Shown one piece after another: positions 60,139 through 61,718 of a DNA stretch of 64,000 nt. The position numbers and the translations under genes are program-made. Below the pieces are notes generated by a model, which worked only from the letters and a program-made list of their open reading frames with translations, was not told the DNA's origin and searched no databases. The number at the start of each line of letters is the position of its first letter. The first letter of the stretch is position 1. The DNA is taken from assembly GCF_006345805.1 (NCBI RefSeq), contig NC_043005.1, forward strand, positions 89,714,001-89,778,000, read 5' to 3'. Source of the DNA: Octopus sinensis (taxonomy: Eukaryota).

Positions 60139-60189
<51 letters not shown>

Positions 60190-60547
60190 TCAATAATAAT
60201 ATAGGGTGAAATTAATTAATTTGGAATAATCATTAATTTCACCAAGTAGATTTCGGTATGTAAAAGCCCCATTCAAGGAAGGTTTAAGTAATTAAGGGTT
60301 TAGCAACGATTTGCCTTACCACACACCGGATTTAGAAATAGCAGTCAATTAATTAATTTCACCCTATATTATTATTGATAATTATATTTCGAAAACCCAT
60401 GATGTGGGTGGGTGTTGGAGTGAGAAAGGTTTTTAATCCAAACAACAAAAGAAAAAAATGTCGCAAGGAATTTTGGGTTTGAAGCACCACCATTTGAACC
60501 ACCCACCTGGAATAAATAATAATACGAAGAAATCATTATAAACTTAC

Positions 60548-60690
60548 CTGTAATCTAAGTCAGGTGTAATAAAAACCATGCTTCCAATGTGTAAACCATC
60601 CATAATGGTTGAAGAGAAGAGGAAAGCTAGCATCAGTTTCTGATAAAGTCCACATCCTCCAATTGTCCCAATCACTTCTTCGTAGTCCAT
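60548..60690 (-). CDS. SLC22: Duplicate of SLC22 coding exon 1 (coding sequence identical, donor intact)
   Basis: The 143 coding nt are identical to 62836-62978 and the gtaag donor is kept. The copy lies in a 655-bp duplicated block (60390-61044 vs 62677-63349). Whether it is used is unknown. Confidence 0.6.
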
Positions 60691-61273
60691 GGTGAACAAA
60701 CCTCTCAGAACAAATGTGTCGTCAGCTTCAAGCAATTTCTAATTGTGTCTGTTAGCGAATATGTCTGGCTACTTTCATGCATACTTACATAATATATGTA
60801 TCAATTGAGCAAGTGAGAGTAGCTGTAGGAGTGTAAGTGGTGGTAAGGGGGAGGAGGGGAGGCATGGGAGTGAAGGACTAGCATTTGGGATTGGGTGTTG
60901 TATGGAAGTGAGAGGAGGAGGGGAAAAGAGAACAAGAGAAAGAGTGTGGGGGAGGGGGGATTAAATGCGAGTATGTCTCTATCTATATATATCTCTAATT
61001 TATAAATCTGAAATGCCAAAAGTTTGTTTGTTTGAGAACGGGTTGATTTCACCCTATATTATTTTTCATCCCAGTAAAAAACCTTACTTATTTTGGCAGC
61101 ACACTGACGGGAGGAGGATGGTGACATACTTTCATTCACAGTTTGAATTTGGTGGTACTGGTAATGGCTTACACTGGCTGTGATACTACGAGTTGATGTG
61201 ATGTCTTCTAGTGCCTTCAAATTTAATACACAATTATTAATGATTGAGACGCAATTATTTATAATTGTAGAGT

Positions 61274-61364
61274 CCTACGCTGAGGAGGAAAATAGTTGGG
61301 TAAGACATAATTATTTAATTTTTGTGCTTTTCTATGGCTTAATTCCGAAACGTACGACCGTAGG
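61274..61364 (+). ncRNA. Hammerhead with long stem II insert and damaged cleavage site (U16.1->A)
   Basis: CCUACG-CUGAGGA-GGAA...UUCC-GAAA-CGUACG-AC-CGUAGG. Confidence 0.6.
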
Positions 61365-61652
61365 TGACCTAATGTAGAATGATTATCGTCATTTCTTTCT
61401 CTTTTGTCTGCGTTGTTTGCCTTTTAAGTGCTGTGGTTTTACTGGGATCTCCCTTTTAAGTAGAAAGAATAGCCAAAACTCTTTTGACTGCTAATTCTAA
61501 ATCCGGTGTGTGGTGAGGCAAATCGTTGCTAAACCCTTAATTACTTAGTATTACTTAAACCTTCCTTGAATGGGGCTTTTACATGCCGAAATCTACTTGG
61601 TGAAATTAATGATTATTCCAAATTAATTAATTTCACCCTATATTATTATTGA

Positions 61653-61718
<66 letters not shown>

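What the first reader, a model, noticed from the sequence alone, without database searches (positions are those of the whole stretch)
60183..61659. HHR-bounded composite that has captured the host's first coding exon
A 655-bp copy of SLC22 exon 1 (about 350 nt upstream, 143 coding nt, 158 nt of intron) lies between inverted pLTR-like arms, 2.3 kb from the native exon, with the motif ttcaccctatattatt at both junctions. The retained intron sequence implies an unspliced RNA or DNA template, which fits template switching during integration. The coding part and donor are unchanged while the flanks carry several substitutions and a 13-bp indel, so it may serve as an alternative first exon. Identity over 143 nt could also be chance.
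Basis: partly seen in the sequence, partly recalled or inferred. Interest (0 to 1): 0.8.

Follow-up and report, generated by a model that had tools for sequence, protein, structure and literature searches.

The report
Retroelement insertion carrying a copied first exon
In intron 1 of an octopus organic-cation-transporter (SLC22-like) gene, a Penelope-like retroelement insertion carries a 657-bp copy of the gene's own upstream region, first exon and intron start; the copy is shared by two octopus species, is intact, and may serve as a second first exon.

Summary
The window is Octopus sinensis chromosome CM016867.1. A 657-bp copy (60389-61046) of the SLC22-like gene's 356 nt upstream, 143-nt coding exon 1 and 158 nt of intron lies 2288 bp from its source (62677-63350). 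It sits between inverted arms (60181-60348 / 61484-61661), and the motif TTCACCCTATATTATT touches both junctions.

O. vulgaris has the same structure, so it is not a mis-assembly and predates that species split. Paralog comparison shows the upstream copy is the source and the copy between the arms is derived.

"HHR-bounded" is inaccurate. Rfam finds no hammerhead and the arms carry none. One type-I hammerhead motif lies inside the composite (61274-61364). It is intact in O. vulgaris and mutated at U16.1 in this genome.

The arms are the 3' module of a family that ends in (TA)n microsatellites. Head-to-head copies, a junction palindrome and an intron-containing host piece match known Penelope-like insertions.

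A 273-nt core (exon plus adjacent bases) is identical in both copies of both species, while the flanks collected about 22 changes (P about 1e-4). Both public annotations start the CDS at the captured copy. RNA versus DNA template, and actual use as a first exon, remain untested.

The parts
60139..60182 (.). (TA)n tract, left remnant of the microsatellite target
   Evidence: Read directly; repeat families D3/D6.
60181..60348 (-). Arm A: inverted, 5'-truncated copy of the element's ~170-nt 3' module. Its 3' terminus (T1, 60181-60221) faces the left (TA)n.
   Evidence: Reverse complement of arm B (I5/I13, 5, 49). Diverged relatives at L005 38826-39010 and L004 19700-19905 also end at (TA)n. A conserved 3' hairpin is present.
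60347..60387 (+). T2: 41-nt direct copy of the element's 3' terminus. It is a perfect inverted repeat of T1, joined to arm A through the palindrome AATTAATTAATT, and it abuts the captured segment.
   Evidence: 41/41 match with 60181-60221; motif hit at 60358; junction read.
60389..61046 (-). Captured copy (A) of the host gene's 5' end: intron piece 60390-60547, exon 1A 60548-60690, upstream 60691-61046.
   Evidence: 97.8% identical to 62677-63350. Derived status shown. Present in O. vulgaris. The annotated CDS starts at 60690.
60447..60719 (-). 273-nt core identical in both copies of both species: 101 nt of intron, 143 nt of CDS and 29 nt upstream.
   Evidence: Four-way alignment and event tally; scan statistic.
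61043..61069 (+). T3: 27-nt partial terminus motif (24/27 to T2/T4) directly at the other junction of the captured copy.
   Evidence: junction.
61070..61483 (+). Inner part of the full-length unit ('mid'), with no other copy in about 410 kb of octopus DNA sampled.
61274..61364 (+). Type-I hammerhead-like motif: helix I CCUACG/CGUAGG, core CUGAGGA, helix II GGAA/UUCC with a ~52-nt loop, GAA, helix III AC-GUAC-G(A/U), then C17. Position 16.1 (61357) is A here and U in O. vulgaris.
   Evidence: Descriptor scan. A strict descriptor gives 0 hits in 60 shuffled windows and hits the O. vulgaris copy. The difference at 61357 is. The centroid fold shows helices I and II. Rfam is negative.
61484..61661 (+). 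Arm B: 3' module of the full-length unit. Its terminus T4 (61621-61661) faces the right (TA)n.
61660..61717 (.). (TA)n tract, right remnant of the target.
62677..63350 (-). Source segment (N) in its ancestral context. Exon 1N is 62836-62978.
   Evidence: The paralog L005 intron is homologous beyond the boundary (62593-62676). A dispersed repeat (63274-63420 = L005 21656-21806) runs uninterrupted across the upstream boundary.
47983..47983 (-). First base of exon 2, the acceptor shared by both first exons.
   Evidence: ttcctag|GTGTGCT; agrees with protein P0001.

Best explanation
A non-autonomous, hammerhead-bearing retroelement of Penelope-like (PLE / retrozyme-like) type inserted into a (TA)n microsatellite in intron 1 of an SLC22-like organic cation transporter gene. 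This happened in an ancestor of Octopus sinensis and O. vulgaris.

As is typical of PLE insertions, two copies lie head to head. One is a full unit (61043-61661, plus-strand sense). The other is an inverted, 5'-truncated copy (60181-60348). Their 3' ends face outward into the (TA)n.

At the head-to-head junction the polymerase left the element template and copied 657 nt of nearby host sequence: 356 nt upstream of the ATG, exon 1 and 158 nt of intron 1. The synthesis then joined back to element termini (T2 and T3) with 0-2 nt of microhomology.

Shown:
- the anatomy;
- which copy is derived;
- the age relative to the species split;
- the element's retroelement-like 3' module;
- the (TA)n targeting.

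Inferred:
- that it was one event;
- that a template switch made it;
- whether the template was the gene's unspliced RNA, which has the same sense as arm A, or the adjacent DNA. The source starts only 116 bp from the ancestral target once the insertions are removed.

The captured exon keeps its ATG, reading frame and consensus donor, and it encodes the same 48 residues. It probably acts as a second, downstream first exon (possibly with its own proximal promoter) spliced to exon 2 at 47983. That would change regulation, not the protein.
For: - Duplicate and arms.
- Same structure in O. vulgaris, with 8 substitutions and 3 indels fixed between the copies and shared by both species.
- Polarity (N is the source, A is derived and carries a derived 16-bp deletion).
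- The copy's two boundaries coincide with element termini, and homology does not continue outside the arms.
- The arms are the 3' module of a dispersed family. The relatives in L005 and L004 abut (TA)n at the same terminus, and the L005 relative has no inverted partner within 65 kb.
- A conserved 3' hairpin, z = -3.2 to -4.7, in three diverged members.
- A hammerhead motif with metazoan type-I architecture, intact in O. vulgaris, with 0 strict hits in 60 shuffles.
- Arm A-arm B divergence (2 shared substitutions and 1 indel in 166 nt) is of the same order as A-N divergence.
- An autonomous PLE copy and another repeat family in this window also end in (TA)n.
- Literature: PLE insertions form inverted 5'-truncated copies, carry 30-40-bp tails, prefer (TA)n, retain introns and can carry host genes framed by one inverted and two direct pLTRs, with palindromes at inverted junctions (PMC8557442, PMC3846280). 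The metazoan HHR architecture is described in PMC4209133.
- Function: the 273-nt core is invariant in four sequences, against about 22 events in the 380 flanking nt (P = 9e-5 by scan statistic). Both annotations start the CDS at copy A.
Against: - There is no RT/GIY-YIG ORF in the composite.
- No autonomous PLE sharing the 3' module was found in about 410 kb sampled.
- Only one hammerhead motif exists. It is not in the repeated arms, it is mutated in this genome and Rfam does not see it.
- No target-site duplication can be read in (TA)n.
- T3 is too diverged (24/27) to be a same-age copy of T2, and the origin of T2 is unexplained.
- The copy reaches -356 and ends inside a dispersed repeat. That is an unlikely natural transcription start, so a pre-mRNA template is doubtful.
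- The source lies only 116 bp to 1.6 kb away, which fits a purely DNA-level repair event equally well.
- Exon 1 and the proximal intron are 90-100% identical among paralogs. Gene conversion, rather than selection on copy A, could therefore keep the core invariant.
- The annotations' choice of copy A may only reflect the shorter intron.
- No transcript data could be obtained.
Confidence: 0.55

Rival explanations
1. A DNA-level local duplication, independent of retrotransposition. A break or stalled fork in the fragile (TA)n / inverted-repeat region was repaired by synthesis-dependent or microhomology-mediated template switching (SDSA / FoSTeS / MMBIR). This copied 657 bp of the neighbouring sequence into pre-existing element copies.
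For: The source is very close: 116 bp from the ancestral (TA)n once the insertions are removed, and 1.6 kb as the sequence stands. The junctions have 0-2 nt of microhomology. The copy includes probable promoter sequence upstream of any likely transcription start and ends inside a repeat. The region is full of inverted repeats and (TA)n.
Against: Both breakpoints fall exactly at 3'-terminus motifs of the same element family and in the same orientation. That is not expected for random microhomology. Arm-arm and copy-source divergences are similar, which suggests one event. The layout matches described PLE captures (PMC3846280).
Confidence: 0.25
2. Capture by a cut-and-paste DNA transposon (Pack-MULE-like transduplication). 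The arms would be long terminal inverted repeats, and 60181-60387 would be a 205-bp MITE with perfect 41-bp TIRs.
For: There are perfect 41-nt inverted termini and 166-176-nt inverted arms. The TA-rich flanks are compatible with a TA target site.
Against: The related copy in L005 shows a single terminus at (TA)n with no inverted partner within 65 kb. The L004 relative also ends at (TA)n, but its other side is cut by an assembly gap. Homology between family members is limited to one end, a 3' module with a conserved hairpin. A hammerhead motif sits in the unit. No transposase-related sequence was found, and no clear TSD follows T2.
Confidence: 0.07
3. An ordinary tandem duplication later invaded by two independent elements, or an assembly artefact (haplotype duplication).
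For: Two near-identical segments lie 2.3 kb apart in a repeat-rich intron.
Against: The spacer 61046-62676 has no counterpart after 63350, so there is no tandem unit. The homology ends exactly at the element termini. The same structure, with shared fixed differences, is present in an independent assembly of another species.
Confidence: 0.03

Closest known systems
Penelope-like element insertions that carry intron-containing host sequence between pLTRs (Adineta vaga Pen3a / NRPS case, PMC3846280; general PLE architecture, PMC8557442)
   Same: Both have an inverted 5'-truncated copy next to direct copies, a palindrome at the inverted junction, and a host fragment with intron sequence lying between element terminal repeats. 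Both show microsatellite (TA)n targeting and a hammerhead motif in the element.
   Different: Here only a gene's 5' end is captured (upstream region, exon 1 and part of the intron), and it lands in the same gene, 2.3 kb from its source. The carrier has no ORF, and no autonomous partner was identified. No TSD is readable. The upstream 'direct pLTR' is only 41 nt long.
Non-LTR (metazoan) retrozymes: hammerhead-bearing non-autonomous PLE derivatives (bioRxiv 10.64898/2026.07.22.740005; HHR architecture in PMC4209133)
   Same: A short non-coding unit carries a type-I hammerhead with a 6-bp helix I, a 4-bp helix II with G10.1-C11.1, and a 2-bp helix III capped by a palindromic GUAC loop. True tandem arrays of 490-bp hammerhead units lie about 2-6 kb beyond the window's end.
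   Different: The unit here is a single ~1.05 copy plus an inverted fragment, not a tandem array. Its loop 2 is about 52 nt long. The core is mutated in O. sinensis. There is no sequence similarity to the neighbouring arrays.
Chimeric retrocopies made by reverse-transcriptase template switching (U6/L1-type chimeras), recalled from general knowledge and not tested here
   Same: A host segment lies 5' of, and in the same sense as, a retroelement 3' end (arm A), joined with little or no microhomology.
   Different: The copy is intron-containing and probably promoter-containing. A 41-nt inverted terminus lies between the two parts. The source is adjacent in cis.
Pack-MULE / Helitron-type gene-fragment capture by DNA transposons
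   Same: A host gene fragment lies between inverted terminal sequences.
   Different: The element family behaves as single-ended 3' modules at (TA)n and carries a hammerhead. There is no TSD and no transposase relation.

Membership tests
Penelope-like element (PLE) insertion | ORF with a PLE-type reverse transcriptase and a GIY-YIG endonuclease | tested here: not met
   No ORF lies in 60181-61661 apart from the captured host exon. The composite could only be non-autonomous. A separate PLE copy lies at about 52880-50390 (weak RVT_1 hit; GIY-YIG-like motif read by eye).
Penelope-like element (PLE) insertion | Pseudo-LTR architecture: partial tandem and/or an inverted 5'-truncated copy flanking the unit | tested here: met
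   Arm A is an inverted 166-nt copy of the 3' end of the unit that ends in arm B. T2 is a 41-nt direct copy of the terminus.
Penelope-like element (PLE) insertion | Hammerhead ribozyme motif in the terminal repeat | tested here: inconclusive
   There is one motif, at 61274-61364. It lies outside the part that is repeated in the arms. It is intact in O. vulgaris and mutated at 16.1 here. Rfam is negative.
Penelope-like element (PLE) insertion | Insertion bias for microsatellites such as (TA)n | tested here: met
   Both outer ends of the composite, and the termini of the L005 and L004 relatives, abut (TA)n.
Penelope-like element (PLE) insertion | Target-site duplication | not testable with these tools
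   The flanks are (TA)n on both sides, so a duplication cannot be read.
Penelope-like element (PLE) insertion | 3' end shared with an autonomous PLE of the same genome | tested here: not met
   The arms and the inner part show no similarity to the PLE copy in the window or to anything near RT-coding sequence in about 410 kb sampled. The sample is 0.015% of the genome, so this is a weak negative.
Hammerhead ribozyme, type I | Conserved core (C3 U4 G5 A6 N7 G8 A9, G12 A13 A14, A15.1-U16.1, H17) with three helices | tested here: inconclusive
   O. vulgaris has all core positions, a 6-bp helix I, a 4-bp helix II with G10.1-C11.1 and a palindromic helix III. In the window, position 16.1 is A, which gives an A-A mismatch. 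Rfam covariance models do not match. They also miss the well-formed tandem-array motifs nearby.
Hammerhead ribozyme, type I | Self-cleavage activity | not testable with these tools
   This needs an in vitro transcription and cleavage assay.
Non-LTR retrozyme | Head-to-tail tandem monomers, each with a hammerhead | tested here: not met
   There is a single unit of about 584-nt period, present as ~1.05 copy, plus an inverted fragment (D12, 5).
TIR DNA transposon / MITE | Terminal inverted repeats, a TSD and two-ended copies elsewhere | tested here: not met
   TIR-like ends are present. However, the L005 relative is single-ended (the L004 relative is cut by an assembly gap), and no TSD follows T2.
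SLC22 / MFS transporter gene (host) | Sugar_tr / MFS_1 domains and a conserved N-terminal exon | tested here: met
   P0001 (XP_029641021.1) is encoded by this locus and carries PF00083 and PF07690.
Alternative first exon | Intact start codon, reading frame and splice donor | tested here: met
   These features are identical to the source in both species.
Alternative first exon | Transcripts that start at the copy and splice to exon 2 | not testable with these tools
   No transcript contigs for this gene were found in the protein collection. The annotations start the CDS at the copy, but the two copies cannot be told apart by CDS alone.

The most novel reading that the evidence does not exclude
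A Penelope-like integration copied the promoter-proximal region and first exon of the gene it landed in. The template would have been either the nascent unspliced transcript or the DNA next to the break. The copy has since been kept by selection in two octopus species as a working second first exon/promoter. That would make retroelement template switching in cis a route to tandem alternative first exons.
Probability: 0.3. Interest if true: 0.65.

Novelty: new member of a known kind. Interest (0 to 1): 0.45.

Why it matters
Penelope-like elements are the one retroelement class known to move intron-containing host sequence, and the documented cases are whole genes in rotifers.

This would be a cephalopod case in which the captured piece is a gene's own 5' end, placed inside that gene. 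That is a concrete route to duplicated first exons and promoters without any change to the protein.

The locus is clean and datable. It is shared by two species, and the source and the copy are distinguishable by fixed variants. Template choice and the fate of a duplicated first exon can therefore be tested here.

It also shows that octopus hammerheads with a very long loop 2 escape the Rfam models.

Tried and rejected
- **Rfam.** Searches of the whole window (gathering threshold and E<=1), of the locus (E<=10), of the O. vulgaris motif and of the neighbouring tandem arrays gave no hammerhead hit anywhere. The arrays have well-formed helices and are still missed, so the negative is uninformative for this class.
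- **MFE folding.** Folding of the O. sinensis motif does not give the hammerhead fold (z = +0.55). Only the O. vulgaris centroid shows helices I and II.
- **Transcript evidence.** A search with the exon 1+2 peptide for short products from read assemblies found only genome-annotated octopus proteins.
- **Empty site in an outgroup.** The only O. bimaculoides locus reachable (L004, via P0138) has a single exon 1. However, it is alignable only over exons 1 and 2, it contains 9 kb of gaps, and it may be a paralog. One paralog look-up failed and one gave no DNA.
- **More copies of the element.** None were found in L001-L006, apart from two diverged 3' modules.
- **RNA editing footprint.** Only 2 of 9 fixed differences are A-to-G on the sense strand, which is not informative.
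- **HHR-like strings at 27625 and 28045.** These are plain hairpins, not hammerheads.
- **Pfam on the PLE endonuclease ORF.** No hit.

Full report
**What the window is.** The 9 kb around the finding is 100% identical to Octopus sinensis GCA_006345805.1, chromosome CM016867.1, reversed (locus L001; window x = 70691 minus the L001 position). The gene on the minus strand encodes XP_029641021.1, 'organic cation transporter protein-like' (P0001, 550 aa, Pfam Sugar_tr and MFS_1). It is one of a cluster of SLC22-like paralogs on this chromosome. Exon 2 starts at 47983 behind a ttcctag acceptor.

**The observation.**
- Copy A (60389/60390-61046) matches 62677-63350 at 97.8% over 647 nt, with an offset of 2288 bp.
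- On the minus strand it holds 356 nt upstream of the ATG, the 143-nt coding exon (60690 down to 60548, ending CAG|GTAAGT) and 158 nt of intron.
- It lies between inverted arms, 60183-60348 and 61484-61659. These are 97-99% complementary apart from a 10-bp indel.
- TTCACCCTATATTATT occurs four times in the window, all at this locus, against 0.02 expected. Two occurrences touch the two ends of the copy.
- The indel is 16 bp here, not 13. In O. sinensis the identical run is 277 nt, not just the coding part.

**Not an artefact, and older than the species.** The orthologous O. vulgaris locus (L002, GCA_951406725.2) is collinear at 97.3% and has both exon copies, both arms and the inner part. In a four-way alignment, 8 substitutions and 3 indels separate copy from source in both species alike. 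Each of the four sequences also has a few private changes. The duplication therefore predates the split, and the flanks have evolved independently since.

**Which copy is the original.**
- Paralogs L003, L005 and L006 (O. sinensis) and L004 (O. bimaculoides) each have a single exon 1.
- The intron of paralog L005 stays homologous to the upstream copy for a further 84 nt beyond the duplication boundary (62593-62676).
- A ~150-bp dispersed repeat (63274-63420, 93% identical to L005 21656-21806) runs uninterrupted across the other boundary.
- Copy A is cut inside that repeat and carries a derived 16-bp deletion.
- So 62677-63350 is the source, and the copy between the arms is derived.
- Homology does not continue outside the arms, and the spacer has no counterpart after 63350. 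This rules out a tandem duplication that was invaded later.

**What the arms are.**
- The ~170-nt arm sequence has diverged relatives at L005 38826-39010 (67% identity) and at O. bimaculoides L004 19700-19905. In both, the same terminus abuts (TA)n. L005 has no inverted partner within 65 kb, and homology is limited to this end.
- A hairpin about 25-35 nt from the end is predicted in all three members (z = -3.2 to -4.7), although the stem sequences differ.
- This is the behaviour of a retroelement 3' module, not of a TIR transposon.
- The composite therefore reads, on the plus strand, as follows:
  - (TA)n;
  - an inverted 166-nt 3' module (arm A);
  - the palindrome AATTAATTAATT;
  - a 41-nt direct terminus (T2);
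  - the captured host segment;
  - a 27-nt terminus-like motif (T3);
  - 414 nt of unit body;
  - the 3' module (arm B);
  - (TA)n.
- Another repeat family next door (61718-62515), and the one autonomous-looking PLE copy in the window (about 52880-50390, minus strand), also end in (TA)n.

**The hammerhead question.**
- Rfam finds nothing, and the arms have no CUGANGA.
- My descriptor scan finds one motif, at 61274-61364 (+). It reads CCUACG-CUGAGGA-GGAA(~52 nt)UUCC-GAA-AC-GUAC-GA-C-CGUAGG.
- In O. vulgaris the triplet is GUC, which completes the core. In this window, position 61357 is A.
- A strict version of the descriptor has 0 hits in 60 dinucleotide shuffles of the window. In real octopus DNA it hits the O. 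vulgaris copy, one site in L006, and arrays of 490-bp units. Those arrays lie just beyond the window's end (L001 289-4578) and in L003.
- Rfam also misses those arrays, so its silence is uninformative for these long-loop-2 motifs.
- The architecture is that described for metazoan type-I hammerheads of PLEs: a 6-bp helix I, a 4-bp helix II with G10.1-C11.1, and a 2-bp helix III with a palindromic loop (PMC4209133).
- 'HHR-bounded' is therefore wrong in detail. There is one motif, it is internal, and it is decayed here. The element is nevertheless hammerhead-bearing.

**Mechanism.**
- Described PLE insertions show an inverted 5'-truncated copy next to the unit, 30-40-bp tails, palindromes at inverted junctions and (TA)n targeting. 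They retain introns and can carry host genes, or unrelated sequence, framed by one inverted and two direct pLTRs (PMC8557442, PMC3846280).
- The present layout matches this. The host piece sits exactly at the head-to-head junction.
- Arm A and the captured segment share the same sense. A DNA strand primed at the left (TA)n, extended through arm A and then switched onto host template would give the observed order and orientation.
- That template could be the unspliced SLC22 transcript or the adjacent DNA. The source begins 116 bp from the ancestral (TA)n once the two insertions are removed.
- The copy ends at -356, inside a dispersed repeat. That argues against a natural 5' end of a pre-mRNA.
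- I could not separate RNA from DNA. The origins of T2 (a perfect inverted copy of T1) and of the diverged T3 remain unexplained.
- Arm-arm divergence (2 shared substitutions and 1 indel in 166 nt) is of the same order as copy-source divergence. This is compatible with one event but has low power.

**Function of the captured exon.**
- Across the four sequences, about 22 mutational events fall in the 380 flanking nt and none in 60447-60719. That core comprises 101 nt of intron, the exon and 29 nt upstream. A scan statistic gives P = 9e-5 for 22 events.
- Since the species split, copy A's flanks gained about 7 events. About 5 would be expected in its core, and none is seen.
- Both public annotations begin the CDS at copy A: L001 and L002 position 10001, with the exon-1 peptide hitting at 7713/10001 and 7770/10001.
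- Caveat 1: the two copies are indistinguishable by CDS, so annotators may simply have taken the shorter intron.
- Caveat 2: exon 1 and its first ~100 intron bases are 90-100% identical even among paralogs that are only ~80% identical as proteins. Concerted evolution could therefore maintain the core.
- If the copy is used, the protein is unchanged. The effect would be on regulation, or on competition between two identical donors.

**Verdict.** This is a real, shared and precisely bounded capture of a gene's 5' end inside a Penelope-like, hammerhead-bearing composite in a (TA)n microsatellite. It is a new instance of a known PLE behaviour, with an unusual cargo and landing place. The mechanism and the function are plausible but unproven.

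Noticed in passing
L001 289-4578 (window-equivalent about 66100-70400, just beyond the window's end); also L003 about 29900-33500: Tandem arrays of ~490-bp units, each with a well-formed hammerhead-like motif: an 8-bp helix I, a 5-bp helix II with a ~55-nt loop and a palindromic helix III (CGGUAUACCG). One inverted unit is present. They look like non-LTR retrozyme arrays, and Rfam 15 does not detect them. Their 10.1-11.1 pair is A-U rather than G-C.
   Followed up: partly
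window 62836-62978 and 60548-60690 with about 100 nt of adjacent intron; L003, L004, L005 and L006 around position 10001: Exon 1 and the first ~100 nt of intron 1 are 90-100% identical at the DNA level among SLC22-like paralogs, and between O. sinensis and O. bimaculoides. The proteins overall are only ~80% identical. This points to a nucleotide-level constraint or to concerted evolution.
   Followed up: partly
window 11848-13672 (-): Two long ORFs in different frames with GRAM (E = 4e-29) and VASt (E = 6e-38) domains lie inside an intron of the transporter gene. This is an Aster/GRAMD1-like gene or an intron-poor copy nested in the SLC22 gene.
   Followed up: partly
window about 50390-52880 (-): A 5'-truncated Penelope-like element: an RT ORF (weak RVT_1 hit) followed by an ORF with a GIY-YIG-like motif read by eye. 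Its 3' UTR holds a decayed hammerhead-like string (CUGAUGCGGUCAC...GUGACGAAAG). Its 3' end runs into a 300-bp (TA)n, and (ATT)n/(TA)n lie on the 5' side. A 117-bp fragment of the same RT is at 63805-63921.
   Followed up: partly
window 61718-62515: A second composite repeat sits between two (TA)n tracts. A ~362-bp unit is present as a direct pair (61718 / 62080, 99%) plus an inverted copy (62297-62515, 97-98%). Other copies of this family in L001 also mostly abut (TA)n. This is the same tandem-plus-inverted style as PLE insertions, but no hammerhead was found.
   Followed up: partly
window 56517-60142: A large nested inverted-repeat complex. 56517-56813 pairs with 59850-60142 (96.6%), and 58085-58706 pairs with 59144-59837 (83-96%). 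It is interrupted by a 1.27-kb repeat (56814-58087, 94% identical to L001 30380-31671). A diverged PLE RT fragment lies in the loop (about 58749-58901). The complex directly adjoins the left (TA)n of the finding.
   Followed up: no
window 63274-63420: A ~150-bp dispersed repeat lies in the transporter's upstream region, with a 93% identical copy in an intron of paralog L005 (21656-21806). It was useful for showing which exon copy is ancestral. Its own nature (SINE or MITE) was not examined.
   Followed up: no
window 19380-21569 (-) and 23455-25700 (-): Long ORFs with the look of reverse transcriptases of non-LTR (LINE-like) elements lie inside the transporter's introns. They were not examined.
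   Followed up: no
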